This document shows positions 2,519 to 62,825 of a stretch of DNA of 64,000 bases, one piece after another. The notes beneath the pieces are model-generated. The model did no database searches. It was not told the DNA's origin and worked only from the letters and a program-made list of their open reading frames with translations. Positions within the stretch are counted from its first letter, which is position 1. Every line of letters starts with the position of its first letter. The translations under genes were made by a program, and so were the position numbers. The stretch comes from Macrostomum lignano (lineage: Eukaryota), in assembly GCA_002269645.1 (NCBI GenBank), contig NIVC01001300.1:186001-250000 (forward strand). Reading direction: 5' to 3'.

Positions 2519-5500
2519 ATGTTTTCATGCAAAGCACAGCTGCTACTGACTTTGGAAATAATCTTGATGTTAAACCTGGCATCTCTGGTCTCTTCCAAGT
2601 CCGTTTTAAAGAATTTACAATCAGCTGGTGAGTTTACGTGTGATTTTTACGCTTGCTAATGTTTTCTTCGGTAAAGCTTGCTTTTTAATAATACGAATGC
2701 CAATTAAAGTACCGAAATAAACCCGAGAGCCCACGAGAAGGACCCAGATGTGAACTCTATAACACGCCATGTTCTTGTTAAAATCCAGCCACTGAAAAGC
2801 TCTTGGTCTTTGGATAGCATTTAAATTCCAGAATATATTCGGCTGCCAATCAGAGCGACAGTCTGTCCGGATCCAATGGATTCCATAGCCCGCACACACT
2901 TGATGTATCAGGCTTTGATAAAATACGAACTAAAATATTTTAATTAGGACTGTAGGCAACCTGGCGCAACGCCTTTGACGACATCCCCCCACAGAAAGCG
3001 ATGACGGCAAATCCACCGACTGCTGAGCACAGGGTGTACAGTGGCCCTGGCTTCACACGACAATCTCCGGGCCAACTTCCGTGCACACAAGCCCCAAATG
3101 ATTCTACCGTAAATGAAATTTGTTCAGTTTGAAACTCAGAATCGCAACTGTTAGATACAAAATAGTTTTTAGGTCACAATTTTAGCTGATGTAGCCGACG
3201 CAATGAAGCTTAAGCGACTTAATTAGCAAATCGACATGTCCTATCAAATCAATTTGGCTTTATAAACTAAAAAAATCTTGTAGTGTGTCCTGTTTCCGGT
3301 TTCTTATATGGGCGCCCACTTAAGAGTCCGGAGCGCCCACCAAGAGACAGGGGCGCCTAACAAAGTGTTTGGGGCGCTAAAACGCTATCGTCACGTTTCC
3401 ATTGCTTCTTCTGTTCATCGCACAAGTCTTAGAAAAAATCTGTTTCAATTCAGGATCAGCTGCTGCCTGCTCTGCCACCATTCAGAAGTTTTGAATTTCT
3501 ATTTGATTATTAGGATGCTTGCGTGTCCAGGTTCTTTATCGTAGCTCGTATCTACTCATATTGTACTCGAATCAAATCGCATTGCTCGCTGATGCAACGA
3601 TTCAAATTTTGATTGTGCTCAGCTGATCATGTCATGAGTAAACTTCAATACAAGCGAGATTTCAGTTTTTTAATCCAAGACACCGAATATTGGCGCTCCT
3701 TTAGGGTAGCCCCCGAATTATAATTCCTGCGTTCGCCACTGCAGCTATCAATGTTATCCTCAGGATTTTCTTTGAATCTTGCGGCTATCAAGCTCTAGTA
3801 TACATATATGCATGATATCCAGAGAAGTTTTTGCGCAACATGCTTTAGTTGCTGGGTTACTAAAAACCGGATTTTACTGAATTATCTGACCTATCAAATA
3901 AATTCTGATAATTATAAACCCAAAAATGTTTTGCAGAGTTCGACAAGGACGCCAACGAATTGGCGCGGACGAGGCGAGCCGCCTGCAGCGAGGGCGACTG
4001 CAAGAATGGAGGCATTTGCTGGCCGGGTGCTGTGACGTCAAGCGTTCCTCCGTGTCTGTGTCCTGAGGCGTACACTGGTACTCATTGCACTGTTAGAATA
4101 GACTTCTGTGCTACATCTTCGGACGCTGGCGCTACAAGAACCAATCCCTGCCAAAACGGAGGCACCTGCAGCAACTCAGACGCGAGCCCCTGGTATCACT
4201 GCAGCTGCGTTCCCGGCTACACAGGTGGGTGACCAGGTGGGGCAAAGCCAGTTGAAATTGACGCACCTGCGAATTGCCTGAGAAAATATATTAATAATAG
4301 AAAGCCATTTGAGTGTTAAATATTGATTTTTTGTTTCGTTGGTTTACCTTTTTGACAAAATGCATAGCAAAAAAGATGTAAGCCAATCTAATGAATTGCT
4401 ACAAATACTCAATGGTTGAGAGAGATAGCGAATGGAGGCGGTTTGGATAAAATTGCACCCTTACCAAAATTTTTATCCCTAAAAACTGAAAAAAAAGATT
4501 TAAACAATCTCGTTAAATGAAAAGGGCTCAATTTTTGTCCCCTCTTGGAAATGGCAAAACTGGCTTTCGAATTTCATGTAGCTAGGGCGCCCACCTCAGA
4601 GACAGGGGCGCCCACCTCAGAGACAGGGGCGCCCACCTCAGAGACAGGGGCGCCCACCTCAGAGACAGGGGCGCCCACCTCAGAGACAGGGGCGCCCACC
4701 TCAGAGACAGGGGCGCCCACCTCAGAGACAGGGGCGCCCACCTCAGAGACAGGGGCGCCCACCTCAGAGACAGGGGCGCCCACCTCAGAGACAGGGGCGC
4801 CCACCTCAGAGACAGGGGCGCCCACCTCAGAGACAGGGGCGCCCACCTCAGAGACAGGGGCGCCCACCTCAGAGACAGGGGCGCCCACCTCAGAGACAGG
4901 GGCGCCCACCTCAGAGACAGGGGCGCCCACCTCAGAGACAGGGGCGCCCACCTCAGAGACAGGGGCGCCCACCTCAGAGACAGGGGCGCCCACCTCAGAG
5001 ACAGGGCGCCCACCTCAGAGACAGGGGCGCCCACCTCAGAGACAGGGGCGCCCACCTCAGAGACAGGGGCGCCCACCTCAGAGACAGGGGCGCCCACCTC
5101 AGAGACAGGGGCGCCCACCTCAGAGACAGGGGCGCCCACCTCAGAGACAGGGGCGCCCACCCAGAGACAGGGGCGCCCACCTCAGAGACAGGGGCGCCCA
5201 CCTCAGAGACAGGGGCGCCCACCCCAGAGACAGGGGCGCCCACCTCAGAGACAGGGACGCCCACCCCAGAGACAGGGGCGCCCACCTCAGAGACAGGGGC
5301 GCCCACCTCAGAGACAGGGGCGCGCACCTCAGAGACAGGGGCGCCCACCCCAGAGACAGGGGCGCCCAACTCAGAGACAGGGACGCCCACCCCAGAGACA
5401 GGGGCGCCCACCTCAGAGACAGGGGCGCCCACCTCAGAGACAGGGGCGCCCACCTCAGAGACAGGGGCGCCCACCTCAGAGACAGGGGCGCCCACCTCAG

Positions 5501-8500
5501 AGACAGGGCGCCCACCTCAGAGACAGGGGCGCCCACCTCAGAGACAGGGGCGCCCACCTCAGAGACAGGGGCGCCCACCCAGAGACAGGGGCGCCCACCT
5601 CAGAGACAGGGGCGCCCACCCCAGAGACAGGGGCGCCCACCTCAGAGACAGGGACGCCCACCCCAGAGACAGGGGCGCCCACCTCAGAGACAGGGGCGCC
5701 CACCTCAGAGACAGGGGCGCGCACCTCAGAGACAGGGGCGCCCACCCCAGAGACAGGGGCGCCCAACTCAGAGACAGGGACGCCCACCCCAGAGACAGGG
5801 GCGCCCACCTCAGAGACAGGGGCGCCCACCTCAGAGACAGGGGCGCCCACCCCAGAGACAGGGGCGCCCACCTCAGAGACAGGGGCGCCCACCTCAGAGA
5901 CAGGGGCGCCCACCCCAGAGACAGGGGCGCCCACCTCAGAGACAGGGGCGCCCACCTCAGAGACAGGGGCGCCCACCTCAGAGACAGGGGCGCCCACCCC
6001 AGAGACAGGGGCGCCCACCTCAGAGACAGGGACGCCCACCCTAGAGACAGGGGCGCCCACCTCAGAGACAGGGGCGCCCACCTCAGAGACAGGGGCGCCC
6101 ACCTCAGAGACAGGGGCGCCCACCTCAGAGACAGGGGCGCCCACCCCAGAGACAGGGGCGCCCACCTCAGAGACAGGGGCGCCCACCTCAGAGACAGGGG
6201 CGCCCACCTCAGAGACAGGGGCGCCCACCTCAGAGACAGGGGCGCCCACCTCAGAGACAGGGGCGCCCACCTCAGAGACAGGGGCGCCCACCTCAGAGAC
6301 AGGGGCGCCCACCTCAGAGACAGGGGCGCCCACCTCAGAGACAGGGGCGCCCACCCCAGAGACAGGGGCGCCCACCTCAGAGACAGGGGCGCCCACCTCA
6401 GAGACAGGGGCGCCCACCCCAGAGACAGGGGCGCCCACCTCAGAGACAGGGACGCCCACCCCAGAGACAGGGGCGCCCACCTCAGAGACAGGGGCGCCCA
6501 CCTCAGAGACAGGGGCGCGCACCTCAGAGACAGGGGCGCCCACCCCAGAGACAGGGGCGCCCAACTCAGAGACAGGGACGCCCACCCCAGAGACAGGGGC
6601 GCCCACCTCAGAGACAGGGGCGCCCACCTCAGAGACAGGGGCGCCCACCTCAGAGACAGGGGCGCCCACCTCAGAGACAGGGGCGCCCACCTCAGAGACA
6701 GGGGCGCCCACCTCAGAGACAGGGCGCCCACCTCAGAGACAGGGGCGCCCACCTCAGAGACAGGGGCGCCCACCTCAGAGACAGGGGCGCCCACCCCAGA
6801 GACAGGGGCGCCCACCTCAGAGACAGGGACGCCCACCCTAGAGACAGGGGCGCCCACCTCAGAGACAGGGGCGCCCACCTCAGAGACAGGGGCGCCCACC
6901 TCAGAGACAGGGGCGCCCACCCCAGAGACAGGGGCGCCCACCTCAGAGACAGGGACGCCCACCCCAGAGACAGGGGCGCCCACCTCAGAGACAGGGGCGC
7001 CCACCTCAGAGACAGGGACGCCCACCCCAGAGACAGGGGCGCCCACCTCAGAGACAGGGGCGCCCACCCCAGAGACAGGGGCGCCCACCTAAGAGACAGG
7101 GGCGCCCACCTCAGAGACAGGGGCGCCCACCTCAGAGACAGGGGCGCCCACCTCAGAGAAAAGGGCGCCCACCTAACAGACATGAGCGCCAACCTCAGAG
7201 AAGGGGCGCCACCCCGCTATCGTCACGTTTCAATTACTCTTTCCGTTCATCGCACAAACCTTGGAATAAATATCTGTTCAGGGCCAGAAATCGATGCTGC
7301 TCGCCCTGCCACCATTCAGAAATTTTGACTTTTCACTTTATGGTTATGATGGCTATGTGTGCGAGTTTTTTGTATTGTAGCCCGTACTTACTCAGATTGT
7401 ACTCAAATCTAATCGAAGATTGGCGCCTCTTAGGCGCCCCTCTGCGCCCCTGTAATGCCGATATTATCTTAATTCGTCTGCAGTTTGAGACAATGCTATT
7501 CATCTTTAGTACGCGTATACATGCATGATACACATGCTTTTAGCGCATGGTGCTCTGGTTGCCAGGAACATTCAGGCTGCTTTGAGTGACATTGCTCAGC
7601 GTTCCGTATTCGTTTCTGTTCTGCACTGTCTGGAAGGCGATAAGAAACATTCGAGGTTTTGTGCATTTGATATTTCTCCGCTTGAAATTTGACTTTTCGT
7701 TAAAAAATGTGCTGAATCAGGAAAGCGAACAAGCAAGATTATTTTCTTTGCTATTTTTGAAATTTCCTGTAAACTTCACAGGCACCGACTGCGAGATCAA
7801 CATTGATGACTGCGCCAGCAAGCCCTGCGCCAACGGCCTGTGCTCAGACTTGGTGAATGACTACAGCTGCAGCTGCTTCACAGGCTGGGAGGGCAGGAAC
7901 TGCAACATCAACCACAACGACTGTCCAACCGGCGCCTGCCTCAATGGCGGCAGGTGCATTGATAGCAACGGCACGTGAGTTCCGCTTCGGTTTCTGTCAG
8001 TAAAGTTACGAGCTGGTTGCTTTCCTGTTTCCAAGTTTTTTCTGTAGTGCTATAATTAATATGCAGTGTAAGTACAATTCGTAAACTACGAGTATAAAAC
8101 CTTACTTTGCTCTGATCAAGTATAACCGTCGGATGTAATAGTTGATAAAATTTCACAGCAAAAACTTCGACAGAAACACTCTGAACATCCAGACTATGGG
8201 GCCAAATTTTCTTTTTGTATTTCAGATTCACCTGTGACTGCACAGACACGGGATTCACAGGTGACAGGTGCCAAAAAAACATTGATGACTGCGCCAGCAA
8301 GCCCTGCATCAACGGCCTGTGCACGGACCTGGTGAAAAACTACAGCTGCAGCTGCTTCACAGGCTGGGAGGGCAGGAGCTGCTCAGTGGACACTGACTAC
8401 TGCCTGTCAGGGCCCTGTCAGAACGGCGGCGTCTGCAGCGACGGAAACTCCACGTGAGTTCTTTGAGCTATTTGGAAGCTGCAGATGGGTTTTGGCATGT

Positions 8501-11500
8501 GCAAAGCCTCAGATCGGTATGTTTTAACTACTTACTAGCCATGTAGCTGCCCTTCGGGGGGAAGCTTAAACATAACTTCCGTTTCCCGTTGAACCCCTTG
8601 GGGAGCAAAGAATGAATGTAATAATTTTATTAATAATGTAATTGAATAACATGCAATAATAATGTACATGTACACTATTACATATAATGTACATGTCCCA
8701 CTCTATTCCAACCCTAGCTAGCACCATCTTTACATACTAGGCTTGTATAATATGTTGACATTCAATTGCCTAACAGGAACAGTATTAGCAGGCAATCCCC
8801 CTAAGTCGAAAGCATCCCCCTGACAGCAAGCATCCCCCAGACAGCAAGCATCCCCCTGACAGCAAGCATCCCCCAGACAGCAAGCATCCCCCTGACAGCA
8901 AGCATCCCCCAGACAGCAAGCATCCCCCAGACAGCAAGCATCCCCCTGACAGCAAGCAATCCCCCAGACAGCAAGCATCCCCAGACATCAAGCATGCCCC
9001 AGACAGCAAGCATCCCGCAGACAGCAAGCATCCCCCAGACAGCAAGCAGCCCACAGCAAGCATCCCCCAGACAGCAAGCATCCCCCAGATAGCAAGCATC
9101 CACCAGATAGCAAGCATCCCCCAGACAGCAAGCATCCCCCAGACAGCAAGCAGCCCACAGCAAGCATCCCCCAGACAGCAAGCATCCCCCTGACAGCAAG
9201 CATCCCCCAGACAGCAAGCATCCCCCAGACAGCAAGCATCCCCCTGACAGCAAGCAATCCCCCAGACAGCAAGCATCCCCAGACATCAAGCATGCCCAAG
9301 ACAGCAAGCATCCCCCCAGACAGCAAGCATCCCGCAGACAGCAAGCATCCCGCAGACAGCAAGCATCCCCCAGACAGCAAGCAGCCCACAGCAAGCATCC
9401 CCCAGACAGCAAGCATCCCCCAGATAGCAAGCATCCACCAGATAGCAAGCATCCCCCAGACAGCAAGCATCCCCCAGACAGCAAGCAGCCCACAGCAAGC
9501 ATCCCCCAGACAGCAAGCATCCCCCAGACAGCAAGCATCCCCCAGACAGCAAGCATCCCCCAGACAGCAAGCATCCCCCAGACAGCAAGCATCCCCCAGA
9601 CAGCAAGCATCCCCCAGACAGCAAGCATCCCCCAGACAGCAAGCATCCCCCAGACAGCAAGCATCCCCCAGACAGCAAGCATCCCCCAGACAGCAAGCAT
9701 CCCCCAGACAGCAAGCATCCCCCAGACAGCAAGCATCCCCCAGACAGCAAGCATCCCCAGACAGCAAGCATCCCCCAGACAGCAAGCATCCCCCAGACAG
9801 CAAGCATCCCCCAGACAGCAAGCAGCCCACAGCAAGCATCCCCCAGACAGCAAGCAGCCCACAGCAAGCATCCCCCAGATGTTGCTTCGAAAGTCTACTA
9901 TTCTGTGATTTAGGTTTCTTTTCCTTTTCGGCATAACAAAGCCAGTTAATTCAACGGACGAATAGATTTGCACGTCACGTGGATCAACAAAACGAAGGAT
10001 TTCAATATATACACGAGGGATCAAACAAAGAAGATGTTTTTTGTCTATGGCCCGAGTCATAGTTAGCTCTGACTGCGAGAAAAAAAACACTAAAAGCATA
10101 GGCAAAAAGCAGGTTTTCTCAACTTTAAAGGGCCATCTTTGTGAATATCAAGAATCAAAATAGTCATGCATAGTCCCGTAAAAATTTCCAATCAAATGGT
10201 GCCAGTTTGATAAATTTTGGTCCAACAGTCTAGGAGGAGTAATAAAATACCTACAATATGATTTTCATCTTTAGTATATTGGATTGGAAAAGGATTTTTC
10301 TCTTCGTGGATTTCTAAATTTCTATGTAAGTTTCCTAATCTTTTGAGAAGCTGCAGATGCAATATGGTGTACTCAAAGCCTCAGATTAATTTTTTTGCTG
10401 TTGATTTCATTTTATTGTGTAAGGGTCTGCAGTCTTTGTTTTTGATAATGTAGGCAATGCAATAAATTTATTTGAAGCTTTCTGGCATGCCCAAACATCT
10501 TTCTTGTCAGCTAGCAACTTCAGTTTTTAGAAATATTTAGGATCTCGACTTTGCTGTCTTCCCAATGCATCCGGATGCCCCGAGCCCCTGCCACTAAATC
10601 AGTTTCTTGGATCTGACGCTGCAAGAAATGTTTTGGTAGGAACTTAAGTGACATCGATAGGTCAGGGTATAAACTTGTTTGCAAACTCTTTTGAGACTGA
10701 GTTGGATTCAAAAAACGTCTAAAAGGGCTCCATTGAGAACGGTTTCGAAAGGCGGCGTTTTAACGCATAATTATCCTGAACAGAATTATCCGATTAGATA
10801 ATTCTGTAATCTGTAGACTCAATCCGTTTCTCCCGTCTTGATTGTAAAATTGTGAAGTCTCAGTGCATGCCCCATAGTCTTTTTGCAATTTATTTTTTAA
10901 ATTAGAGCTCAGAGGCTTTTTCATTGATGCGTTAAAACATAAACGATTGTAAATTTCCATAAGGAAAATCTAAAAAAATCGTAGGAAAGAGATATTGAAA
11001 ACCAACTATATTTCCGTGATAGGTAAGCAAAGTTAAAACAGGTGTCGATCAAAAAATAAAACAGGCGATTTTTAAGACTCTTACTTCATCGGCGCAAGCA
11101 TTACGGTCTCAAAGTGCCTTTTCTAATCCAAAATCAGTTTTACCTGCGACTGCTCTCTCGTCGACTTCCAAGGCGCCACATGCAGCTCCAGGATCGATGA
11201 CTGCGCGTCGAGCCCGTGCCAGCACGGCGGCAGGTGCACCGACGGTGTCAGGAGCTTCACCTGCGGCTGCCTGCCCGGCTACGAGGGCCCGACCTGCTCA
11301 GTCGACATCAACGAGTGCGAGCGGTTCGGACAGCCGTGTCAGAACGGAGCCGTCTGCAAGGACCTGGTAGCGGATTATGCCTGCACCGGCTGCCCCGCTG
11401 AGTTCGGAGGCAAAAACTGCTCCGTGCTGCTTCCACAGTACTCGTTCGGCATAAGCGGACTTGTATCGTCTGCGAGTTTCGCTTCTCTGCCAAATGTGTC

Positions 11501-13615
11501 AAGGGTGTCTGGCGGAGACTCGTGGACGATTGAGCTGAGGCTGGTGACTTTGTCTCGAGGAGCGTTTCTGCTGCTGCTGGGCGACCCGAGCGACTCGGCG
11601 ACCACTCCGAGACTGCTCGCTACGGTCAGTGTCCTTAATGCTTTTTTCTAGATCCGGTGAAATCTGGTAAAGTCAGTATTTGTTTAAATTTATTCAGATC
11701 GATCACTCTGGCCGTCTGTCCGCCCAGTTACTGCACAGCAACGGCTCCCACATCGCAGCGCTGACGTCCTCAGACTCGGTGGCCACCGGCAGCTTCGTCT
11801 CCGTGAAGATCTCCGTGTCGATATCAGGTCGCTCGCTGTCGCTGTCAGCGTCATTTTCAGTCAGGTCGGCATCGCTGAGCAGTGCGAGTCCGCTGCCGCA
11901 GCTGTCAGGCCAGCTCATCATCGGCGGCTTCAGCGGTCTTCGGGCAGCCCCAGACTCCTCATTGTTGCCTGTAGCTCACGGCAGCCGTAGATCAAAGAGG
12001 TCAGCGCCGACCCTATCGAGTGCAGTGGCCTCAGTTCTACCAGCGAACACCACAGCTTTCCGCGGCATCATTTCTGGCCCCAAACTGAACGGCGAGAAGC
12101 CGCTGATGTTGCGTCCTGTCTCTCCCAGCTTGCTGGCAAGCCTTCCTCAGGCCATTGCAGCCAGCGATTCGTCTGGTGTACGACTGGGAGTTGTTTCTGA
12201 GGTGTGCGAAACGTTTTCACCTTGCAGAAACGGAGCTACATGCGTGGACGTATTCTACAATTCCTATGAGTGATCAGTTTTTGTGATTCAGATTGCTGCC
12301 ATGTTCCGTAGTGCATATTGTCTATGGCAACTCCGCAGGTGCAAATGCCACAATGGCTACTCGGGCGTGAACTGCTCGGTTGATCACCCCGACTGCAGCC
12401 CGAATCCGTGCAAGAGCGGTGAAGTCTGTTTGGAGAGAAGTGACCAAGCGAACTACAAGTTGAGATTTCTGCCTTGGCCTTTCAATGGGTCATTCAGCTA
12501 TGATCTGGCTCCCGGATTCGTCTGTATTGATTCTTATGGTGAGACGTTTTTTATTGTCGTCTTTAAAGCGTTTTTTGTATGTTTATTTTTTATATGTTCG
12601 AGTGAGGTTGTGAAGTCTAGGTTTGCGTGCCGAAAAAAGGTGGCCTCTGTATGGCTCTGTTTACTTACTATATACTTTTAGTTAATATTGTGGGGTGGGG
12701 TGAAGCGATGCGCGATTGGTCGAGAATTAACAAACAAGTTTAGGCGAGAGAATGAGTCATAAATAATAATGTGGGGCAGAGAGTGCAGCGCACGGGCTAC
12801 GCCCTACAGAGGTGTTTTACTGAATATGAGTTCTATATTTTTTTAGAATCACGAAGCTCTTCAGTAGTTGTAGGCGCAGTTGTGGGTGCACTTACTGTCG
12901 TCCTCACAGCTGCGCTCGCTGTCGCCGTGGTGGGTCTTTTAATCCGTTTTGTAAGTGCAGAGATTGTTATATTATTGTGCTATTTGCGATAATGACGCAT
13001 GAACTGTAATTGCGATCATCGTTTTGCCAATTTTAGGGCTATTTATCCCGAACCAAGCCAGCCAAGTATGCGGAACCAACAGTTTCATCAACTGATGAAA
13101 TTTTACGTGTAAGCTTTGCTGTGGAATTTCGAAATACATTTTGAAATGTGGGTTTTAATTCTCAATAGAATACAAAATATTGGTGCCCACACAGAATGCC
13201 AAGGTGCAGGATGCTGACTTAGCGCATCAGTATGCCTCAGCTACTGAAGAGCTCTGCAAAGCTTCAATTGTAAGATATCGGTTCGCTTTCCTTGACATTT
13301 GTTACGAGTATAACTTTTGAAAGAAAAAACGGTGTGTTATTACTAACGAACAAACTACCGAGTAGACCTTCAAAATTCTAACACTGAAGAGAAATCAATC
13401 GAGACCTTTCATGTTTCGTGTTGATGATAATGAGTGAATATCATACGAAGTATATATATTTATTGTTTTTACTTTGCCCCCTGCAGAAAAATCGACAGAA
13501 CCTTCCGCTTCCACCAGTCCAGATGGATTCCATTGCTGAAGCCGCAGGTTGCGAATACGCAAACGAGAAGTCGGATTTCGCACCTGCCATTTACGCTAAT
13601 GAAGGTTTTCAGTGA
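2519..13615 (+). CDS. Gene A: type I membrane protein, about 9 EGF + 1 LamG-like + truncated Crumbs-type EGF + TM + about 90-aa Tyr-containing tail
   Basis: Phase-consistent GT-AG exons: 2519-2627 (signal peptide MFSCKAQLLLTLEIILMLNLASLVSS), 3937-4224, 7782-7974, 8226-8453, 11138-11624, 11698-12269, 12339-12538, 12847-12950 (TM VVVGAVVGALTVVLTAALAVAVVGLLI), 13037-13108, 13195-13269, 13487-13615 (ends IYANEGFQ*). Exon 1 and the small tail exons are least certain. Confidence 0.85.
3307..3720 (+). mobile_element. Dispersed non-coding repeat carrying seed copies of the GAPTSET 21-mer
   Basis: Similar to the end of the 4585-7213 array and its flank to about 7440 (cgctatcgtcacgtttc...gttcatcgcacaa...ctgccaccattcagaa...ttggcgc). 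Confidence 0.55.
4585..7213. repeat. 21-bp GC-rich minisatellite (ggggcgcccacctcagagaca) in intron 2 of gene A
   Basis: Over 100 tandem units, occasional 20-bp units. Confidence 0.97.
8788..9878. repeat. 18-bp minisatellite (cagacagcaagcatcccc) in intron 4 of gene A
   Basis: Direct tandem copies with 17-19-bp variants. Confidence 0.96.
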
Positions 13616-14688: not shown

Positions 14689-14789
14689 AGTTGCAATTAA
14701 TAAATGTAAATTATCAAAACCAACAACAGGAAGTTTAACATAGTAAGAAATGACTGATGACTGACCACCAGAAGAGCATGCGATACTTA

Positions 14790-17900: not shown

Positions 17901-18450
17901 TTTGTATCCATGGAACTTTCAACGAAGTCGTCCGGATGAAAATGTCTGGAGCAAATCCTTGAGTTTTTTGTTGGCTCAAACTCCTGCCTTGGGTTGGCTC
18001 GCTTCCACTTTTCCAGAAGGGCGGGGTCCTTCCATGGAAAACTATGGAAGCTGACTCCTGCGACAGTTCCATTTGCTCGATTTGAGCATCCGTACGCTGA
18101 GCAAGCCTTCACCATTAGTGGTCTTTACTCTCAGAGTCTCAGACAATTATAAGTGCTAGTTAGCAAAAACAAGGAGAGATCGTTTTTAGGACATGCTGTA
18201 CAGTGCAGCGATTCTTGTAGTCCACTATAGGCCACAACCCCGGCCGAAATACGAACAGGGACGAATTGGAATGTACATTGTAGAGAGAGCTTTTTAGTGT
18301 ACAACGAAAGCTTTCTTTCCCTCGTGGAACAAACACCCCAAGCCCCCAACTGGGGGACAGAAGGGAGAAGCAGTGCCCCCCTGTGGTATAGGGTGGAAAA
18401 TAAAATTATCTCTCCTTCCAGTCCAGTTGCTTGTGGTCCCGGGGTCCGCG
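14994..18450 (-). mobile_element. THAP/P-superfamily DNA transposon, full length (3457 bp)
   Basis: Imperfect TIRs CGCGGACCCCGGGA...GCAACTGGACTGGAAGG; 7-bp TSD ACTAGTA at 14987-14993 and 18451-18457; encodes transposase. Confidence 0.92.
15233..18115 (-). CDS. THAP-domain P-element-like (THAP9-type) transposase, about 932 aa
   Basis: Exon 18115-16226, 84-bp GT-AG intron, exon 16141-15233 in frame. THAP motif (CSAYGC...FHSFP...W...CSRHF...AVPSIF) and catalytic-region motifs LAIDE, VCVDN, FDPVH, QSDCIESRFG. Confidence 0.92.
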
Positions 18451-55681: not shown

Positions 55682-58600
55682 ATGTCTTCACGACACCAGA
55701 GCTACCTGTCAAATCTATCAGCAATCGTAATTGGCTTCAGTTATTGCTTCTGCCTGCTTTCGGCTGCTGGATCGGCAAAGGATACGATACAGCAGCTTGA
55801 TCCTGATGGTATGCATAGATGGTATCCATTTATCGAAATAAACTCAGTTTAGCTCATTTTTTATTTACTGAGTAAAATTCGTTTGTTTATCTTTTAAGTA
55901 GTAAGTAGCATTTTTGCAGCTGCAATCGCCTCATTAAATACCCAGGAGTCGATGACTTTTCCTTGCTAAATCGACAGCGCAGGGAAACCTGCGATTCTTT
56001 GGAATGCGTCAACGGTGGCATCTGCAACAGCAGCGAGCCGGTTTGCTCCTGCCCGAAGCCCTACTCAGGAGACAATTGCAGCGTCACAGATGACTACTGC
56101 AGCAAGCTGCAACCGGATATGGGTATCGACTCGTTGCCAGTCTGTTTGAACGGCGGATTATGCAGTCCCATAGAGACAGAGCCTTTCTTTAATTGCAGCT
56201 GCAGCATCAACTACACAGGTAAAAACTTCATTTTCATCCGTTGCAGTAATTTTTTAAGCAACGCACACACACACACACACACAAGATCACACATTGATGT
56301 TGAAAACTTTCCAGGCAATCGATGCGAACTATTTGAGGCCTGCTCCATTCGGAAACCGTGCAGCAATGGACTTTGTGTTGGAACAAGTAGCGGCAAAAAC
56401 TGCAGCTGCTTTGCAGGATGGACTGGCGCTTCTTGTGCTACAAATGTCAATGACTGCCAAACTGGGCTGTGCAAGAATGGAGGCGAATGCATTGATGGAA
56501 ACTCAACGTGAGTCAAATTCCAGGTCATTTGGTACGTACGGGGGCGTAGCGGTCTAGCGCGGCGCTCTGCTGCGCCAGCGACCCAGGCTCGATTCCAAGT
56601 GCAGCCAAATTAATTCGGGGCTAAATTGGAATCTCGGCTTGGCTCTGCTCGTGTAATTAGTGGTCTTGAGAGCCAATAAATTTATCGTTTTATAAAGGCC
56701 CTGTGTGAGTGCGTCTGTGTGCGTGTTCCTGCTCAGGGGAGTTGACGGAATGGGCAGTAATGCCTCTTGCCGGTTGCGTGACGATGTCACTTAAAGTGCG
56801 ATAGGGTGCCACAGCCTCTGCCTCTAATGAACGAATAATCTGGTTATTTGGTCCGAAAAGTAAGGCAGTTTGTTCAATTCATCGTTTTCCATATTTTTTC
56901 AATGCTCATAATGCATAGAAACTGCATACTGAACAATCACTGTTCTCACATTGTTAAACTGACAAGAGCAACTCTAATTTTCCTGTAATTTATTTCTAAT
57001 TAAACTATAGGTACACCTGCAACTGCTCCAAAACGGACTTCTCTGGTCCCAACTGCACTAATCCGATTAACGACTGCCAGCCGAATCCCTGCGTGAACAA
57101 CGGCACCTGCGTTGACGGCCTGAGAAATTTCACCTGTCAATGCCTGGCAGGCTTCTCCGGCAGAAACTGCTCCATCGATCATCCCGACTGCATTCCCAAC
57201 CCGTGCCCCGCGAATTCAGCCTGCCTCGAGCGAAGCAATCGAAGTCTGTACGGCATTCCGTCTCTGCCAGCTCCGTTCAATGGCCAGTTTCGGTACTCCC
57301 TGGCGGCTGGATACGTGTGCGACAAGGGCTACGGCAGCGGTGAGTGCTGGGTACCGCTGCTAAAACAAGCAGAGGCGGATTCAGAAATATAAACTGGGGG
57401 AGGCGGATTTTAACCAAAAGAGTGGGGGGGGGCGCCATAATATACACTAGAGAGACGCTATAATTTACACTAGAGGGGCGCCATAGTATACAGTAGAGAG
57501 GCGCCATAATATTCACTAGAGTGGCGCAAAAATGTACACTAAAGTGGCGCCATAATATACAATAGAGTGGCGCCATAATATACACTAGAGAGGCGCCATA
57601 ATATACACTAGAGTGGCGCCATACTATACACTAGAGTGACGCCATAATAAAAACACTAGAAGGGCGCCATACTATACACTAGAGGGGCTCCGTAATATAC
57701 ACTAGAGGGGCGCCATAATATACACTAGAAGGGCGCCATTTTCTACACTAGAAGGGCGCCATACTATACACTAGAGGGCGCCATAATATACACTAGAAGG
57801 GCGCCATACTGTACACTAGAGGGGCTCCGTAATATACACTAGAGGGCGCCATAATATACACTAGAGTGGCCCCATAATACACACTAGAGAGGCGCCATAA
57901 TATACAAATGAGGGGCGCCATACTATTCACTAGAGTGGCGCCATACTATACTCTAGAGGGGCGCCATACTATACAATAGAGTGGCGCCATAATGTACACT
58001 AGAGTGGCGCCATAATGTACACTAGAGTGGCGCCATACTGAGAAAACGGGGGGCAATGAGGACCTTTTTTAGTTCAAAGGAAATGGGACCCCATCATTGC
58101 CAGCCATAAGGGGGCGTCGCCCCCCCCCCCTGAAATCCACCACTGCCACCAAGGGGCAGACTGTGAATGCCTGACAATTAGAAAATCAGGGCCGCTGCAC
58201 ACCTCTGTGAGCATATGAGAATATAAGCTACTCGATACTTTTTTATAACAGGCTAACACTGAAATGCCTATGCTACATGATAGAAGTATTTTTATGATGA
58301 AGTTCTTGCTTTTTACATATGGTCAGAAAATACTGTTTTAAAACAAATGTAAGGCTATGAGCGTAATGTACTTGCGCAATAAGTTATTAATTGTTTTGTC
58401 GCTAAATGAATATAATGACTAAAGATTGTCTTTGTGTAAACAGCCAAGACTCATATTGAGAAATAACTCACGAGGTCTGAGTTGGGCCAGTTGCTCAAGG
58501 TAAATATGAAGAACGTTTTTTTCACCTCTTGGCCATAGAAAGGTCCAGAAGGCGGCCCTCAGCCCATCGTTTCCTTATACCACTCCCTTCTCTCTCTTGT

Positions 58601-61600
58601 GCTTTAAACCTCACCCTCTAGTATAGGCGTCCCTGTCTCAGATGACAACTTATTGTAGCAGGCTTAACCATTAATTATGCGACAGGTAGGATCCCCAAAA
58701 GTTTAGTCTAATTCTACCTCGCTTCTAATCGCTTACAAACTAAGAAATAGCTCTGAGTTTGAGCAACCGCTCAAATATCTTTTGAATAAATATTTATCTC
58801 AAACTTGGAGCGAACTCTCAACCACCCGATCAGTTGTTTATTCGCATAAAACCATAGACATAAAATGGTTAAAAAATTCATTTGCTTTGCTTTGCTCAAG
58901 AAAATACTAGCAAATGCTTTAAAAAAATTGTCTATGACCACAGTTTATTCTATACTGCTGCGAGTCTCTATACTCAATCACAGAGCTCATTCGCCCAAGA
59001 TGCAACCAGTCTTACTATTCTTACTGATATTGATAGTTTCGTTGAGTTTGAGCAATTGCTCATTTTATTTATATTGCCTGAGAAATCGGTAAAACAATAT
59101 AGCTAAATACAGACATTAGTAAAGTTTGTAACCAGCTCATTTAATAAAACCCATTTGAGACAATTATCTAGTTTTTCACGCGCCTCACTTCAGGGCTACG
59201 CCATCCTAAACTGTCAATAACCAATCAACTTACATGCACTCATCATTGATTGTAGAACTGCTGAAAGAGAGACACACGGGAATTGGCATTGGAGCAGCGG
59301 CTGGATTTGCTTTCTGTGCACTGCTAGCCGTCATCATCATTCTCGCAGTGCTCAGTGCTTACAAACACGTGAGTATAAATTCCAAATACTGACCAGCTAT
59401 CACATTTTATGTTCTGAAAGTGTTCATATGAATTAAAATATTGACATTTATAATTTATTAATTTTAGAAAAAGATTTCTCTTGGTTGTTTTAGCCGACGT
59501 GATGCTGACTACATTGATGAGGTGAGCACCGTTTTGAGTGTGCAGAGAAGACGCCACCCACAATCCCTAGTTTGATTCTTTAACTTAGCTTAACTTAACT
59601 TTCCTTAACTTAAATTCGAGGGCTTAGGCGCCCCTGGTGCTGGCGCCCCTGGTGCTGGCGCCCCTGGTGCTGGCGCCCCTGGTGCTGGCGCCCCTGGTGC
59701 TAAAGCCCCTGGTGCTGGCGCCCCTGGTGCTGGCGCCCCTGGTGCTGGCGCCCCTGGTGCTGGCGCCCCTGGTGCTGGCGCCCCTGGTGCTAAAGCCCCT
59801 GGTGCTGGCGCCCCTGGTGCTGGCGCCCTGGTGCTGGCGCCCTGGTGCTGGCGCCCTGGTGCTAAAGCGCCCTGGTGCTAAAGCCCCTGGTGCTAAAGCC
59901 CCTGGTGCTAAAGCCCCTGGTGCTAAAGCCCCTGGTGCTAAAGCCCCTGGTGCTAAAGCCCCTGGTGCTAAAGCCCCTGGTGCTGAAGCTCCACAAACCT
60001 ATTGCAATTTTTTGCCGTTTTATTTTATATTGCTTAGAATTTTCGATATCGTATTTTCATCGCATTTTTATGTAGGCTTCTCACAGTCAAAATGCGGCTG
60101 GAGACGGGCATCATGAGCCCAAGCCGTCTGGAAGCTCGTCCGTCGCAGGCGCATCCGACAACCGCAACGGTAATGCAGTCTCTACTGACAGTCGGTGCAC
60201 TTATGTGGACATGACTCAGAACCCTCGGTATACGGGGTCAAGTCAGAATGTCAATGCGTCTGAGGAAACTCGAGAGTCTGTAAGCAGTTTTTTGTTACTT
60301 GTGGTTATTTTTTATTTATCAAAGTAGTTAGGTATTTACAACGGACAGACCTACTTTGTATGATTATTAATGTTGGAACATACTCGTACCTAATAACATT
60401 GATGCCAACTGCCATGCATGTAGTTAACTCAACATTGTGCCGGACCAGGTACTCAAAACAAACCAGGTATATATTGGCCAAACAGTTTAGCTTGAAAAGC
60501 TTCCTTGTAGGGTTGTAACCACAGGTACTAAATACCTTTTAATTTTATGGGTATTTAGTGTCTGTGGTTATAACCTCTTAATTCGTTAGATTTTTAAGCT
60601 CCTAAAACAGCTATAATTTTTTGAATTATTTAAACAAATCAACAAATGTCCTCTGAATCCCAAATAGAAATGTAGTTTTCTTTAGTTTCTTTATCAAAAA
60701 AGTATTGAAATATCGATATTCACCTAGGAGAGTTTTTTTTTGTTTTTATGCAAAACAAAATTGAAGTCATCGATCGGATCGTTGCTGCCTTAATTATTAA
60801 AATCAGCATTCGTTGGTTGATAGTATGGCGGGGTTATAACTTAGGCATATTGAGTACGCTTAGTTTTAAAAAGCATTTTGTAGTAGATATTAGAAGAAGT
60901 CTAGACTGCAACTTTCTTGTTTTAAAAACAATGATCCATTGATGTTTTGTTAAAATCACGTAATTCGTGTTTGACTTTCGTGTTTGACTTTTTCCAGTCG
61001 ATCTACGTCGCTCCGGACGTAGCTGCTGCTGATGCTGAAAATTTGGTATGTATGAACGTTACCTCGTATTTCTGCGGTCGCTTGCAATCGTATTTATGCA
61101 TTTTCAACTTTGTCTCAATCTTAACTTTGTGATCATGCAGGCCGATCACGATGAAACCTACGAAGCACCAAATGCAAATACCCCCCAAAAGGTTACACCT
61201 GAACAAATAGAACCCTTTGCAGTTCAGGTTAGTTAGTGAAAGTGTTTGCTATTAAGTAATTATGCTTGAAGCTTCCATCGCAAAATAGAAATTCTTTTTT
61301 TTAAAGCAGCAGAGATCCATCGCACTTGAAGCCGTTCAAGAGGACGCAGAACCTGACGATACAAACGAAGTTTATATGGTGGCTGATGTCCCTTTGCATG
61401 GGCCTGAATATGGAAGAACTGAAAAATTAGAAAAAACGAATTCTACCTCTGAAGTGAAGACTAAAGCAGATCTGGAGAACACGCCTGGTGCCGCGGGTTC
61501 GTTACCGTGTCTGGCATCTGGTGCGGGGCCGTCTAATACTGAGCAAATGAATCTCAGACGAACTGAGTCCAATGTAAGCTGAACACTGTATTCTGAATGT

Positions 61601-62825
61601 TTGAGATTGCGACTGTGAGTGTCTCAGTTGTGTCTGTGTGAGTGTCTCAGTTTGTGTCTGTGTGAGTGTCTCAGTCAGTTTGTGTCTATGTGAGTGTCTC
61701 AGTTTGTGTCTATGTGTGAGTGTCTCAGTTTGTGTCTGTGTGAGTGTCTCAGTTTGTGTCTATGTGTGTGTGTCTCAGTTTGTGTCCGTGTGAGTGTCTC
61801 AGTTTGTGTCTATGTGTGAGTGTCTCAGTTTGTGTCTATGTGTGTGTGTCTCAGTTTGTGTCCGTGTGAGTGTCTCAGTTTGTGTCTATGTGAGTGTCTC
61901 AGTTTGTGTCTATGTGTGAGTGTCTCAGTTTGTGTCTGTGTGAGTGTCTCAGTTTCTGTCCGTGTGAGTGTGTCTCAGTTTCTGTCTGTGTGAGTGTCTC
62001 AGTTTGTGTCTGTGTGAGTGTGTCTCAGTTTCTGTCTGTGTGAGTGTCTCAGTTTGTGTCTGTGTGAGTGTCTCAGTTTGTGTCTGTGTGAGTGTCTCAG
62101 TTTGTGTCTATGTGTGTGTGTCTCAGTTTGTGTCCGTGTGAGTGTCTCAGTTTGTGTCTATGTGTGTGTGTCTCAGTTTGTGTCCGTGTGAGTGTCTCAG
62201 TTTGTGTCTATGTGTGAGTGTCTCAGTTTGTGTCTATGTGTGTGTGTCTCAGTTTGTGTCTGTGTGAGTGTCTCAGTTTGTTTTTGTCTGTGTGAGTGTC
62301 CCAGTTTGTGTCTGAGTGTGTGTCCCAGTCTGTGTCCGTGTGAGTGTCTCAGTTTGTGTCTTCAAGTATTTTGTGTATTTGAATATGGCCTAAGCTGATT
62401 GCGTACCGACTTTCTATTACGCAATTCTCAGAAAAAGCCGCCAGCAAAGCCGCCAAAGCCGGGGTCGAAGAAAAAGCAGCAACAACAACCGCCGGCTTTG
62501 CCAATTCGAAACAAAAAACCACTGCAGACTACTGTAAGTATTTAAGTTATGAACTTACTATTATATATTTATATAATCAGTTTAATGCACGTTAATCCTA
62601 CAGAAAAGTGTATTTATCAATTTTCATAGTAAGGCGTTTTCACAATTCTTTGAATTCCAGTCGCCTGGCACAAGTGAAGAGTCGGAGACTGTATATGACA
62701 CCATTGAGAATGACAGCTCAGTACCAGCCCAACAGCCGCAGCCGCTGGGACAGCAGCAACAAACCAACGCTGCATTGCCTACCAAGATTGATGTGAACAG
62801 TTTCGCAAAACTTGAAAAATTTTAA
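55682..62825 (+). CDS. Gene F: 5 EGF + truncated Crumbs-type EGF + TM + about 307-aa Tyr/Pro-rich tail
   Basis: Exons 55682-55808 (signal), 55946-56218, 56315-56507, 57011-57339, 59256-59368 (TM), 59468-59521, 60076-60279, 60998-61045, 61141-61227, about 61310-61573, 62432-62533, 62661-62825 (ends AKLEKF*); phases consistent; the 193-bp exon matches exon 3 of A, B and C in length. Confidence 0.8.
56540..56606 (+). mobile_element. tRNA-like head, probably SINE-derived
   Basis: A-box-like tagcggtctagcgc and B-box-like ggctcgattcc at tRNA-like spacing; acceptor stem poor. Confidence 0.35.
57370..58145. mobile_element. MITE-like element containing a 23-24-bp minisatellite (ggcgccataatatacactagag)
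   Basis: Array at about 57430-58040 is clear; imperfect TIR CAGAGGCGGATTCAG / CAGTGGTGGATTTCAG; TSD not seen. Confidence 0.6.
59625..59985. repeat. 15-bp minisatellite (ggcgcccctggtgct / aaagcccctggtgct)
   Basis: Tandem array in a tail intron of gene F. Confidence 0.95.
61610..62360. repeat. GT-rich 22-26-bp minisatellite (gtgtgagtgtctcagtttgtgtct)
   Basis: Tandem array in a tail intron of gene F. Confidence 0.95.

What the first reader, a model, noticed from the sequence alone, without database searches (positions are those of the whole stretch)
2519..62825. Tandem family of Crumbs-derived receptors with variable ectodomains and phosphotyrosine-type tails
Seen: five same-strand paralogs with 1 (E), 5 (B, F), about 9 (A) and about 17 (C) EGFs and 0-2 LamG-like domains. 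A, C and F carry the insert-bearing EGF C(L/V)ERS...Y...LPxPFN.xFxY..A.G(F/Y)xC. The TM-bearing copies have 90-390-aa tails with many tyrosines. Established: that insert EGF and the EGF-LamG-EGF-LamG order are Crumbs features, but Crumbs ends in a short tail of about 37 aa with a FERM-binding motif and ERLI; neither is seen here. Inference: a polarity-protein ectodomain was fused to kinase-substrate tails and diversified by recombination, as expected of a recognition receptor family (immune, allorecognition or gamete), including a possible soluble member. Function is not shown.
Basis: partly seen in the sequence, partly recalled or inferred. Interest (0 to 1): 0.9.

Follow-up and report, generated by a model that had tools for sequence, protein, structure and literature searches.

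The report
Crumbs-like receptor gene cluster, flatworm
This stretch of the flatworm Macrostomum lignano genome holds a tandem cluster of five genes that keep the outer part of the cell-polarity protein Crumbs but carry unrelated, tyrosine-motif inner tails; this is a lineage-specific offshoot of a well-known family, and its function is untested.

Summary
The window is Macrostomum lignano DNA carrying five same-strand genes: A 2519-13615, B 19488-22844, C 24271-40832, E 45274-49802 and F 55682-62825. They are built from EGF modules. A has one LamG-like domain and C has two. A, C, E and F each have a transmembrane segment and an acidic tail of 44, 100, 388 and 313 aa.

The Crumbs ancestry is now tested, not just recalled. 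A 57-column profile of the insert-bearing EGF was searched against 1.84 billion representative proteins. Outside Macrostomum it found almost only Crumbs: 15 of 26 long hits end in ...GTYSPS...EERLI. Gene C aligns collinearly with Crumbs over about 1,100-1,250 aa (E down to 3e-157).

None of the tails has the FERM-binding or ERLI motif. E and F tails share recurrent [D/E]-x-x-Y-x-x-P-[D/N] motifs. RNA-seq-based GenBank models of 92-98% identical copies elsewhere in the genome join ectodomain, TM and tail. In-frame deletions and a fused exon at EGF boundaries show diversification by recombination. dN/dS is 0.4-0.8.

Phosphotyrosine signalling and any immune, allorecognition or gamete role remain unsupported inference. 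Vertebrate CRB1-B is a precedent for a Crumbs ectodomain with a different tail. Verdict: a real, moderately interesting new variant of a known family.

The parts
2519..13615 (+). Gene A, 9 exons, 769 aa. Exons: 2519-2627 (signal), 3937-4224, 7782-7974, 8226-8453, 11138-11624, 11698-12269, 12339-12538 (signature EGF), 12847-12950 (TM), 13487-13615 (44-aa tail ending ..EYANE..IYANEGFQ*). Architecture: signal, RTRR, 9 EGF, LamG2-like domain, EGF, truncated insert EGF, TM, tail.
   Evidence: Splice-consistent model. Pfam finds 7 EGF stretches at E 6e-40. 62-73% identical to M. lignano proteins P0001-P0003. The model was not checked against RNA from this copy.
19488..22844 (+). Gene B, 4 exons, 290 aa (19488-19578, 19978-20247, 21448-21640, 22526-22844). 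It has a signal peptide, RTRR, 5 EGF and a broken sixth EGF, then 32 unrelated residues and a stop. Relative to A it lacks A 11362-13921 (LamG, signature EGF, TM, first tail exon). It is either a truncated pseudogene or a secreted variant.
   Evidence: Self-BLAST: A 10349-11361 matches B 21665-22749, and A 13922-14382 matches B 22796-23278. Breakpoint sequence. Model.
24271..40832 (+). Gene C, 13 exons, 1339 aa. Exons: 24271-24364, 26239-26526, 27449-27641, 28249-28476, 29836-30180, 33045-33484 (complete insert EGF), 33563-34848 (EGFs, LamG1, EGF, start of LamG2), 39248-39777 (rest of LamG2), 39850-40049 (truncated insert EGF), 40130-40257 (TM), 40366-40437, 40532-40609, 40695-40832 (100-aa tail).
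   Evidence: Model. The C-terminal half and tail agree with the RNA-seq-based model P0007 from the homeologous copy. Single collinear BLASTP HSP with Crumbs proteins at E 1e-146 to 3e-157. LamG1 vs Crumbs LamG1 by hhalign: 96.4%.
34898..39219 (-). Ty3/gypsy-type LTR retrotransposon inside the intron that splits the LamG2 coding region of gene C (the same intron is 72 bp in gene A). LTRs are about 216 bp and 99% identical, with TG..CA ends. The target-site duplication is AAGT at 34894-34897 and 39220-39223.
   Evidence: LTR pair; insertion junctions. Pfam finds gag zf-CCHC, protease, RVT_1, RNase H, Integrase_H2C2 and rve in three minus-strand ORFs. Absent from the homeologous copy L002. Present in the merged public model P0004.
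45274..49802 (+). Gene E, 8 exons in my model, 508 aa (45274-45361, 45470-45640, 45783-45889 TM, 45979-46185, 47001-47342, 47690-47890, 48468-48710, 49635-49802). It has a signal peptide, 1 EGF and a relic of a second, TM, and a 388-aa acidic tail with YIDA, YLNA, four YxxPD motifs and VYDELDN.
   Evidence: Model. My model's stop codon, mapped onto L002, falls at 21485, the same position as the end of the 521-aa gene called there. The N-terminus and the EGF-to-TM junction are uncertain, and two public models skip the TM exon (P0008, P0173).
55682..62825 (+). Gene F, 12 exons, 652 aa (55682-55808, 55946-56218, 56315-56507, 57011-57339 with the signature EGF, 59256-59368 TM, 59468-59521, 60076-60279, 60998-61045, 61141-61227, 61310-61573, 62432-62533, 62661-62825). 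It has a signal peptide, RQRR, 5 EGF, a truncated insert EGF, TM and a 313-aa tail.
   Evidence: Model. It matches exon for exon the RNA-seq-derived GenBank protein P0174 (BOX15_Mlig004956g1, 651 aa, 89% identity in the search table) from the homeologous copy L003.
15233..18115 (-). P-element/THAP9-like transposase ORFs between genes A and B: 16190-18115 (641 aa) and 15233-16147 (304 aa). Not part of the family.
   Evidence: Pfam on the 641-aa ORF: THAP 2.5e-18, TNP-like RNaseH_N 2e-14, TNP-like GTP-binding insertion domain 8.5e-11. The 304-aa ORF has no Pfam match.
4585..7210 (.). 21-bp minisatellite (125 copies, unit GGGCGCCCACCTCAGAGACAG) in intron 2 of gene A. The same unit sits at the homologous place in B (20648-21017, 17.8 copies) and C (26890-27193, 14.7 copies). 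It is intronic and open in all frames.
   Evidence: TRF; self-BLAST. Splice junctions skip it.

Best explanation
The window holds part of a tandem array of lineage-specific Crumbs paralogues in Macrostomum lignano.

Shown:
- Each intact member (A, C, E, F) is a type I membrane protein.
- The ectodomains of A, C and F derive from the central part of Crumbs. E keeps only one EGF, and its link to the family is through F-like sequence. The full version (C) reads: EGF array, the Crumbs-specific insert-bearing EGF, EGFs, LamG1, EGF, LamG2, EGF.
- Members differ by whole-module losses, duplications and fusions produced by recombination between EGF-module boundaries.
- The conserved Crumbs tail (FERM-binding site plus ERLI) is absent. 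It is replaced by acidic, domain-free tails.
- Near-identical copies are transcribed as ectodomain-TM-tail mRNAs.

Inferred:
- The ectodomains mediate cell-cell or cell-matrix binding, as Crumbs ectodomains are thought to do.
- The tails act as docking sites. Their recurrent acidic Tyr motifs are [D/E]xxY-x-x-P-[D/N] (Abl-substrate and Crk/Nck-SH2 type), YxN (Grb2 type) in A and C, and a terminal VYD(E/T)(L/I) motif. On this reading they would be phosphorylated by cytoplasmic tyrosine kinases and recruit SH2 adaptors.
- The family would then work as adhesion or recognition receptors, in the manner of Draper/MEGF10/PEAR1 or nephrin, rather than as apical polarity organisers.
- B is a truncated derivative.

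My confidence is about 0.9 for ancestry and architecture and about 0.35 for the phosphotyrosine mechanism.
For: Species and family:
- Best hits are M. lignano proteins.
- Collinear 92-98% identical copies lie on NIVC01000114.1 and NIVC01001242.1.

Crumbs ancestry:
- The A1 profile search of 1.84e9 proteins gave 178 hits at E<=1e-3. The top hits are M. lignano paralogues.
- Of 26 non-Macrostomum hits of at least 1000 aa, 15 end in ERLI with a GTYSPS motif. Five more are Crumbs-like but truncated or with an altered C-terminus.
- Source names include 'protein crumbs' and 'crumbs homolog 1', including mouse Q8VHS2.
- The profile scores Crumbs at 37-53 bits over its full length. It scores Jagged, Delta, fibropellin and DLK2 at 0-16 bits over the first 25 columns only.
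- C aligns with Crumbs in one HSP of 1,100-1,250 aa. LamG1 profile-profile probability is 96%.

Tails:
- No Pfam domain.
- Six YxxP[D/N] motifs in E+F against 1.4 YxxP expected; shuffle p<5e-5.
- Four or five Tyr positions stay aligned between E and F although the proteins are 28% identical.
- All but one Tyr is kept between homeologous F copies.

Expression:
- GenBank BOX15 models are genome-guided RNA-seq assemblies (PMC5730564).
- Those models join ectodomain, TM and tail (P0174, P0007, P0001).

Constraint:
- Open reading frames are intact over 8-13 exons.
- dN/dS is 0.51 for C, 0.42 for F and 0.83 for E.

Recombination.
Against: - No evidence here that any Tyr is phosphorylated or that an SH2 protein binds. 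The motif classes come from general knowledge, not a test.
- Tyr fraction in the long tails (1.8-2.9%) is not elevated.
- The repeated YxxPD units may simply reflect internal duplication of a tail module.
- dN/dS of 0.4-0.8 indicates weak constraint, and for E it is not distinguishable from 1 (5 synonymous and 14 non-synonymous changes).
- RNA support is for homeologous copies, not for this exact copy. C here carries a 4.3-kb retrotransposon in an intron.
- The LamG2-like domain is only weakly recognisable, and its AlphaFold model failed (pLDDT 38.7).
- Two public models of E skip the TM exon.
Confidence: 0.55

Rival explanations
1. Decaying duplicates. The cluster is a by-product of the highly duplicated, repeat-rich M. 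lignano genome. The copies are redundant Crumbs-derived paralogues drifting toward pseudogenes, and the tails are neutral sequence with no signalling role.
For: - B is truncated by a deletion and E is reduced to one EGF.
- C carries a recent LTR insertion.
- dN/dS is 0.83 for E and 0.4-0.5 for C and F.
- The genome has 180-312 Mb of duplicated sequence (PMC5730564).
- Transposons and minisatellites fill the locus.
Against: - A, C, E and F keep open frames across 8-13 exons in both homeologous copies, with no frameshift or stop.
- Coding divergence is below intron divergence (C: dN 0.032, dS 0.063, introns 0.092; F: dN 0.013, introns 0.062).
- Tyr motifs and the C-terminal KID..F end are kept between E and F at 28% identity.
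- Transcripts exist for the sister copies.
Confidence: 0.2
2. Recognition family. The genes are fast-diversifying receptors for self/non-self, immune or gamete recognition, with variable ectodomains generated by recombination.
For: - Modular gain, loss and fusion of EGF and LamG units among neighbours.
- The C-terminal half of LamG2 is too diverged among paralogues for BLASTN, next to a nearly invariant N-terminal half.
- Several tandem clusters exist in the genome.
- The tails are signalling-type.
Against: - No sign of positive selection in the copies compared. dN/dS is below 1 throughout, and the F ectodomain has 1 non-synonymous change in 307 codons.
- No expression or polymorphism data.
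- No ITAM (Yxx[LI] x6-12 Yxx[LI]) in any tail.
- No mention in the Macrostomum literature or in the searched supplements of reproduction-related or differential-expression studies.
Confidence: 0.1
3. Divergent true Crumbs. One or more of these genes is the functional Crumbs orthologue of M. lignano and organises apical polarity through different intracellular partners.
For: - Collinearity with Crumbs.
- No canonical ERLI-tailed M. lignano protein was seen among the 150 best hits of the signature-EGF search.
Against: - The FERM-binding and ERLI motifs are absent from every tail seen here and in paralogues P0001, P0003, P0005, P0007, P0011 and P0174. Those motifs are conserved in every full-length Crumbs retrieved, which include insects, vertebrates and a nemertean.
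- The N-terminal third and C-terminal third of Crumbs are missing.
- The absence of a canonical copy could not really be tested. The library is clustered at 50% identity, the gene models are fragmentary, and no tool here searches the M. lignano genome.
Confidence: 0.08
4. Non-phosphotyrosine tails. The Tyr-centred acidic motifs act as sorting or endocytosis signals, or as binding sites for non-SH2 partners, and the proteins are trafficking or adhesion molecules without kinase signalling.
For: - The terminal YDEL and YDTI fit Yxx-hydrophobic sorting signals.
- The tails are acidic (66 D+E vs 36 K+R in E) and contain a basic, Pro-rich patch.
Against: The dominant recurrent motif, YxxP[D/N], does not fit YxxPhi. 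Its I/V-Y-x-x-P core is the classic Abl-substrate and Crk-SH2 pattern (my own knowledge, not tested).
Confidence: 0.1

Closest known systems
Crumbs / CRB1-CRB2 (canonical)
   Same: The insert-bearing EGF (CxE[RKL]S..LY....F.Y..A.G[FY].C) sits in the same place. It is followed by the same run: EGF, EGF with ECxR[YF]..PC...ADY.C..[YF]GGKNC, an 'LTGC' EGF, LamG1, EGF, LamG2, EGF. Both are single-pass type I proteins.
   Different: - No 37-aa tail, no RxxGTY FERM-binding site and no ERLI PDZ ligand.
- The N-terminal region and the C-terminal LamG3/EGF block of Crumbs are missing from the window genes.
- There is a second, truncated copy of the insert EGF next to the membrane.
- The genes are multi-copy and tandem rather than one to three genes per genome.
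Vertebrate CRB1-B isoform (Ray et al. 2020, PMC7335077)
   Same: A Crumbs ectodomain joined to its own TM and an entirely different intracellular domain lacking the polarity motifs. It is a membrane protein with a proven junctional role.
   Different: CRB1-B is an alternative-promoter and 3'-exon isoform of a single gene, not separate tandem paralogues. Its short tail is unrelated to the tails here, and no Tyr-motif repeats are described for it.
CRB3
   Same: It shows that Crumbs ectodomain and tail can evolve separately.
   Different: It is the mirror image: CRB3 keeps the tail and has almost no ectodomain, whereas these genes keep the ectodomain and lose the tail (my own knowledge).
Draper / CED-1 / MEGF10, PEAR1 (EGF-repeat receptors with phosphotyrosine tails)
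   Same: Working analogy only: a type I receptor with an EGF-repeat ectodomain and a disordered tail whose Tyr motifs recruit SH2 or PTB proteins (my own knowledge).
   Different: No EMI domain, no laminin-type EGF array, and no NPxY or ITAM. The ectodomain ancestry is Crumbs, not MEGF.
p130Cas substrate domain / nephrin tail (clustered YxxP or YDxV motifs)
   Same: Repeated acidic Y-x-x-P motifs in a disordered region: 4 in E and 2 in F.
   Different: No sequence homology. Here there are 2-4 motifs rather than about 15, and they sit on a transmembrane protein. Kinase and adaptor binding are untested.
Delta/Serrate/Notch/Cubilin (names attached to these M. lignano proteins in UniProt)
   Same: They share generic EGF repeats.
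   Different: No DSL or MNNL, no LNR or ankyrin, and no CUB domains in the Pfam scans. The automatic names are misleading.

Membership tests
Crumbs family | Insert-bearing EGF (C-x-E-x-S...Y...[FY]-x-[FY]...G-[FY]-x-C) | tested here: met
   The profile of the four window copies plus P0001 retrieves Crumbs proteins at full length with 37-53 bits. Generic EGF proteins score 0-16 bits over a partial match. Source names are 'protein crumbs' and 'crumbs homolog 1'.
Crumbs family | Collinear EGF array, LamG, EGF, LamG, EGF ectodomain | tested here: met
   Gene C residues 44-1192 align with P0068 residues 475-1659 in one HSP (E 3e-157), and similarly with P0022, P0018 and P0035. LamG1 hhalign gives 96.4%; LamG2 is weak (E 2e-4) but fits Crumbs LamG2 best. 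A has only the LamG2-like unit; E and F have none.
Crumbs family | Single-pass TM followed by a tail of about 37 aa with a FERM-binding RxxGTY motif | tested here: not met
   A TM segment is present, but tails are 44-388 aa with no G[TS]Y[SN]PS motif. The motif is present in all 15 ERLI-ending Crumbs hits.
Crumbs family | C-terminal PDZ ligand ERLI | tested here: not met
   The C-termini are ..NEGFQ (A)..SSFQLA (C)..SKIARF (E) and ..AKLEKF (F).
Crumbs family | Apical localisation and binding of Stardust/PALS1 and Moesin/Yurt | not testable with these tools
   This needs localisation and binding experiments.
Delta/Serrate (DSL) ligands | MNNL and DSL domains N-terminal to the EGFs | tested here: not met
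   No PF01414 or PF07657 match in A, F or any exon peptide.
Draper/CED-1/MEGF10 | EMI domain, NPxY and ITAM/YxxL pair in the tail | tested here: not met
   No EMI match in Pfam. No NPxY, and no Yxx[LI] pair spaced 6-12 residues apart in any tail.
SH2-docking (YxxP / YxN) tails | Clustered Tyr in an acidic context with P at +3 or N at +2 | tested here: met
   E has YIVPD, YCAPD, YVAPD and YACPD. F has YVAPD and YEAPN. A has YANE twice. C has YDNL. YxxP[DN] enrichment: shuffle p<5e-5. This is a motif pattern only.
SH2-docking (YxxP / YxN) tails | Tyr phosphorylation and adaptor binding | not testable with these tools
   This needs phosphoproteomics or pulldown.

The most novel reading that the evidence does not exclude
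A flatworm has converted the ectodomain of the polarity protein Crumbs into a recombining multigene family of phosphotyrosine-signalling surface receptors used for cell or partner recognition (self/non-self, wound or stem-cell niche, or gamete). That would be a receptor class with no counterpart in other animals.
Probability: 0.1. Interest if true: 0.8.

Novelty: new variant of a known kind. Interest (0 to 1): 0.5.

Why it matters
The tail of Crumbs is its best conserved and best understood part. What the large ectodomain does is still debated. Here a family has kept the ectodomain architecture, including its odd insert-bearing EGF, has discarded the polarity tail and has multiplied in tandem. 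That is a natural separation-of-function experiment, the reverse of CRB3 and parallel to vertebrate CRB1-B.

M. lignano is transgenic- and RNAi-tractable, so the role of a Crumbs ectodomain acting without the polarity machinery could be tested directly.

There is also a practical gain. These genes are mislabelled in public databases as 'Delta-like', 'Notch', 'Cubilin' or 'hypothetical', and some are merged across genes and transposons. The models given here correct that for this locus.

Tried and rejected
- Word-indexed homologue search with the 57-aa signature alignment found no candidates and cost one search. The exhaustive HMMER search then worked.
- AlphaFold2 on the LamG2-like region with a 5-sequence alignment gave pLDDT 38.7 and is unusable. 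No fold search was run.
- Pfam does not reach threshold for either LamG. They were resolved by hhalign and collinearity instead.
- Expression data were looked for under the transcript IDs Mlig004956, Mlig017317, Mlig022007, Mlig001267 and Mlig027982. Full text and the supplements of four M. lignano papers gave nothing.
- I tried to rebuild the annotated 521-aa E product of the homeologous copy, to confirm the TM exon by exact look-up. No GT-AG combination starting at the annotated start gave 521 aa, so this was abandoned.
- The long ORFs at 282-1765, 4521-7325, 8789-9933, 24471-25418 and 51541-52306 were considered as coding and rejected. They are minisatellites with periods of 18 or 21 bp.
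- The UniProt names Delta-like, Notch and Cubilin were rejected: no DSL, MNNL or CUB domains.
- Whether M. lignano also has a canonical ERLI Crumbs could not be settled. None was seen among the 150 best hits, but no tool here searches that genome.

Full report
WHAT THE WINDOW IS

The sequence is eukaryotic, with spliced EGF-coding exons on the + strand, many minisatellites and transposons. A query made from gene A's C-terminal half found only three proteins, all from the free-living flatworm Macrostomum lignano, at 62-73% identity.

Three loci of the Mlig_3_7 assembly (GCA_002269645.1) were fetched.
- L002 (NIVC01000114.1) is collinear with window 32705-51086 at 93-97% identity, introns included.
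- L003 (NIVC01001242.1) is collinear with window 45716-63849 at 92-98% identity.
- L001 (NIVC01000038.1) is a paralogous tandem cluster that matches only in exons.

The genome paper reports 180-312 Mb of near-identical duplicated sequence in this line (PMC5730564). The window is therefore one of at least two homeologous or allelic copies of this locus. UniProt A0A1I8JAA5 (P0004) is a merged automatic model of window genes A+B+C. It even includes translated retrotransposon sequence, so that assembly carries the same copy as the window.

GENE MODELS

I built the models from open frames, GT-AG sites with frame continuity, paralogue comparison and the M. lignano proteins.
- A: 2519-13615, 9 exons, 769 aa.
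- B: 19488-22844, 4 exons, 290 aa.
- C: 24271-40832, 13 exons, 1339 aa.
- E: 45274-49802, 8 exons, 508 aa.
- F: 55682-62825, 12 exons, 652 aa.

All five start with a signal-peptide exon ending in a phase-1 donor. F agrees exon for exon with GenBank protein P0174 (BOX15_Mlig004956g1, 651 aa). That comparison revealed two small tail exons I had missed, both present in the window. C's C-terminal half and tail agree with P0007 (BOX15_Mlig017317g1).

The BOX15 annotation is a genome-guided RNA-seq assembly. Transcripts of the sister copies therefore do join ectodomain, TM and tail. E is the least secure model.

CHECK OF THE OBSERVATION

EGF counts are E 1, B 5 (+1 broken), F 5 (+1 truncated signature EGF), A 9 (+1) and C 17 (+1) (Pfam). 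The signature EGF occurs four times. The copies next to the membrane in A, C and F stop after the fourth cysteine. TM segments are unambiguous. Tails are 44, 100, 388 and 313 aa for A, C, E and F, with 2, 6, 7 and 9 tyrosines. No tail has a GTY-type FERM-binding site or ERLI.

IS IT CRUMBS-DERIVED?

This was the key recalled claim, and I tested it three ways.

(1) A 57-column profile of the signature EGF was scored against every one of 1.84 billion representative proteins. There were 178 hits at E<=1e-3.
- After the M. lignano paralogues, the full-length matches are Crumbs proteins.
- Of 26 non-Macrostomum hits of at least 1000 aa, 15 end in ...GTYSPS...EERLI.
- One more has the GTY motif with an altered end, and four are truncated Crumbs-like models.
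- Six are unrelated proteins matched over only part of the profile.
- Source names include 'protein crumbs' (ants) and 'crumbs homolog 1' (rodents, including mouse Q8VHS2).

(2) The same profile separates Crumbs from Jagged, Delta, fibropellin and DLK2. Crumbs scores 37-53 bits over columns 1-55. The others score 0-16 bits over columns 1-25.

(3) Gene C aligns with Crumbs in a single collinear HSP of 1,100-1,250 residues at 31-32% identity, with E from 1e-146 to 3e-157. The HSP runs through the insert EGF, the ECxR[YF]..ADY..GGKNC EGF, the LTGC EGF, LamG1, an EGF, LamG2 and an EGF. Profile-profile comparison gives 96% probability for LamG1 against Crumbs LamG1. For LamG2 it gives a weak best match, placed correctly against Crumbs LamG2 (E 2e-4).

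No DSL, MNNL or CUB domain is present, so the database names 'Delta-like', 'Notch' and 'Cubilin' are wrong.

The family fails two defining Crumbs features, the FERM-binding site and ERLI. I therefore call these genes Crumbs-derived paralogues, not Crumbs.

TAILS

The tails have no Pfam domain. They are acidic and look disordered.
- E and F tails are homologous to each other, and weakly to the tail of paralogue P0001.
- At 28% overall identity, E and F keep four or five Tyr-centred motifs aligned. They also share the ending ..VYD(E/T)(L/I)(D/E)N..QQQ..KID..F.
- Six of their 16 tyrosines sit in Y-x-x-P-[D/N] with acidic residues upstream. About 1.4 YxxP would be expected, and the shuffle p is below 5e-5.
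- A has two YANE motifs and C has YDNL.

From general knowledge, not tested here: [I/V]YxxP is the Abl-substrate and Crk/Nck-SH2 class, and YxN is the Grb2 class. There is no ITAM or NPxY.

Different tails occur on C-type ectodomains in paralogues: P0001 with YDVISD and YDVIPD, and P0003 and P0011 with no Tyr. Tails have therefore been exchanged within the family.

DIVERSIFICATION BY RECOMBINATION

- A, B and C share exon and intron similarity, including the same intronic 21-bp minisatellite.
- A equals C minus 810 bp (270 codons: EGF+LamG1+EGF). The breakpoint lies in the shared TT(C/T)GGAGGC...CTGC that encodes FGG(K/R)xC at the end of two EGFs.
- C exon 29836-30180 is a fusion of two exon types at the FTCDC motif.
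- B lacks A 11362-13921 and runs into unrelated sequence.
- Identity between A and C swings from 98% to below 70% within one gene. The N-terminal half of LamG2 is nearly invariant in all paralogues, while its C-terminal half is unalignable at DNA level. This suggests gene conversion.

CONSTRAINT

Window copy against homeologous copy:
- C (956 codons): dN/dS 0.51, with introns 9.2% diverged.
- F: dN/dS 0.42, with introns 6.2% diverged. The F ectodomain shows 1 non-synonymous change in 307 codons.
- E: dN/dS 0.83, based on only 19 changes.

All frames stay open in both copies. This is weak-to-moderate purifying selection. There is no sign of positive selection at this resolution.

MECHANISM AND RIVALS

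The best-supported reading is a set of type I adhesion or recognition receptors with a Crumbs-type ectodomain and SH2-docking tails. Ancestry and architecture are shown. The signalling mode is inferred.

The rivals are decaying duplicates, a true recognition or immune family, a divergent true Crumbs, and non-phosphotyrosine sorting tails. Each is weighed in its own section. None is excluded, but each has specific evidence against it.

COMPARISON AND NOVELTY

No paper in the searched library links Macrostomum with a Crumbs-like family. The closest precedent is vertebrate CRB1-B, a Crumbs ectodomain with 'an entirely different intracellular domain' (PMC7335077). CRB3 is the mirror image.

I rate this a new variant of a known kind: a tandem, recombining paralogue family with Tyr-motif tails. 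It is real and worth a note.

OTHER CONTENT OF THE WINDOW

- A young Ty3/gypsy element in C's intron.
- A P-element/THAP9-like transposase between A and B.
- Integrase and RT remnants between E and F.
- Nine or more minisatellites that create false long ORFs.
- The array continues beyond the window's 3' end.

Noticed in passing
34898-39219 (minus strand); TSD AAGT at 34894-34897 and 39220-39223: A young Ty3/gypsy-type LTR retrotransposon (LTRs 99% identical) sits in the intron that splits gene C's LamG2 region. It is absent from the homeologous copy L002, so it is a presence/absence difference between genome copies. gag, PR-RT and RNaseH-IN lie in three separate ORFs.
   Followed up: yes
15233-18115 (minus strand): An ORF of 641 aa with THAP, TNP-like RNase H and GTP-binding insertion domains, i.e. 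a P-element/THAP9-like transposase. A second 304-aa ORF downstream has no Pfam match. The pair lies between genes A and B.
   Followed up: partly
322-1633; 4585-7210; 8810-9879; 20648-21017; 24538-25663; 26890-27193; 51687-52195; 57429-58037; 59627-59985; 61614-62361: Minisatellites, mostly with periods of 21, 18, 15 or 24 bp, sit mainly in introns of the family. The same 21-bp unit has 125, 17.8 and 14.7 copies at the homologous intron of A, B and C. The unit at 24538-25663 recurs inverted at 51687-52195. They generate long spurious ORFs in several frames.
   Followed up: partly
A exon 3937-4224, B exon 19978-20247, C exon 26239-26526, F exon 55946-56218: A conserved R-x-R-R (RTRR in A, B and C; RQRR in F; also in paralogues P0006 and P0010) lies one to two residues before the first EGF cysteine, shortly after the signal peptide. 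It may be a furin-type propeptide cleavage site. E lacks it.
   Followed up: no
A about 11950-12000 (RRSKRS); C about 39500-39540 (GRSKRS): There is a dibasic R-S-K-R-S site in a loop of the LamG2-like domain, conserved in M. lignano paralogues. R-x-[KR]-R motifs also occur at the aligned place of many canonical Crumbs proteins (e.g. RKKRQ in P0068, GRRRRQ in P0070, GRRRRA in P0148). This could be a conserved proteolytic site in Crumbs LamG2.
   Followed up: no
A 11698-11936 vs C 39248-39486, then A 11937-12269 vs C 39487-39777: The N-terminal half of the LamG2-like domain (IDHSGRLSAQLLH...QLSGQLIIGGFSG) is almost invariant in every paralogue (95% nucleotide identity between A and C). The C-terminal half is too diverged for BLASTN. 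This sharp mosaic boundary suggests gene conversion or very uneven constraint.
   Followed up: partly
L003 21904-26672 (beyond the window's 3' end): In the homeologous copy the array continues after F with a 186-aa gene and then another 1473-aa EGF+LamG member. The cluster is therefore larger than the five genes in the window.
   Followed up: partly
52499-53669 (+) and 27511-27963 / 27718-27906: These are remnants of retroelement coding sequence. One is the C-terminal motif of a non-LTR reverse transcriptase ([19 protein letters not shown]). Another is a degenerate integrase H2C2 region between E and F. Public models P0008 and P0173 wrongly splice this into an E-F fusion protein.
   Followed up: partly
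P0014, P0015, P0057, P0132, P0145 (hits, not in the window): A separate, unnamed family of proteins has dozens of EGF-like repeats that each carry a different insert (C.ES......V....Y.C.C..G[FY]ANG.C.Y). It partially matches the signature profile. Its origin is unknown (possibly protist or alga).
   Followed up: no
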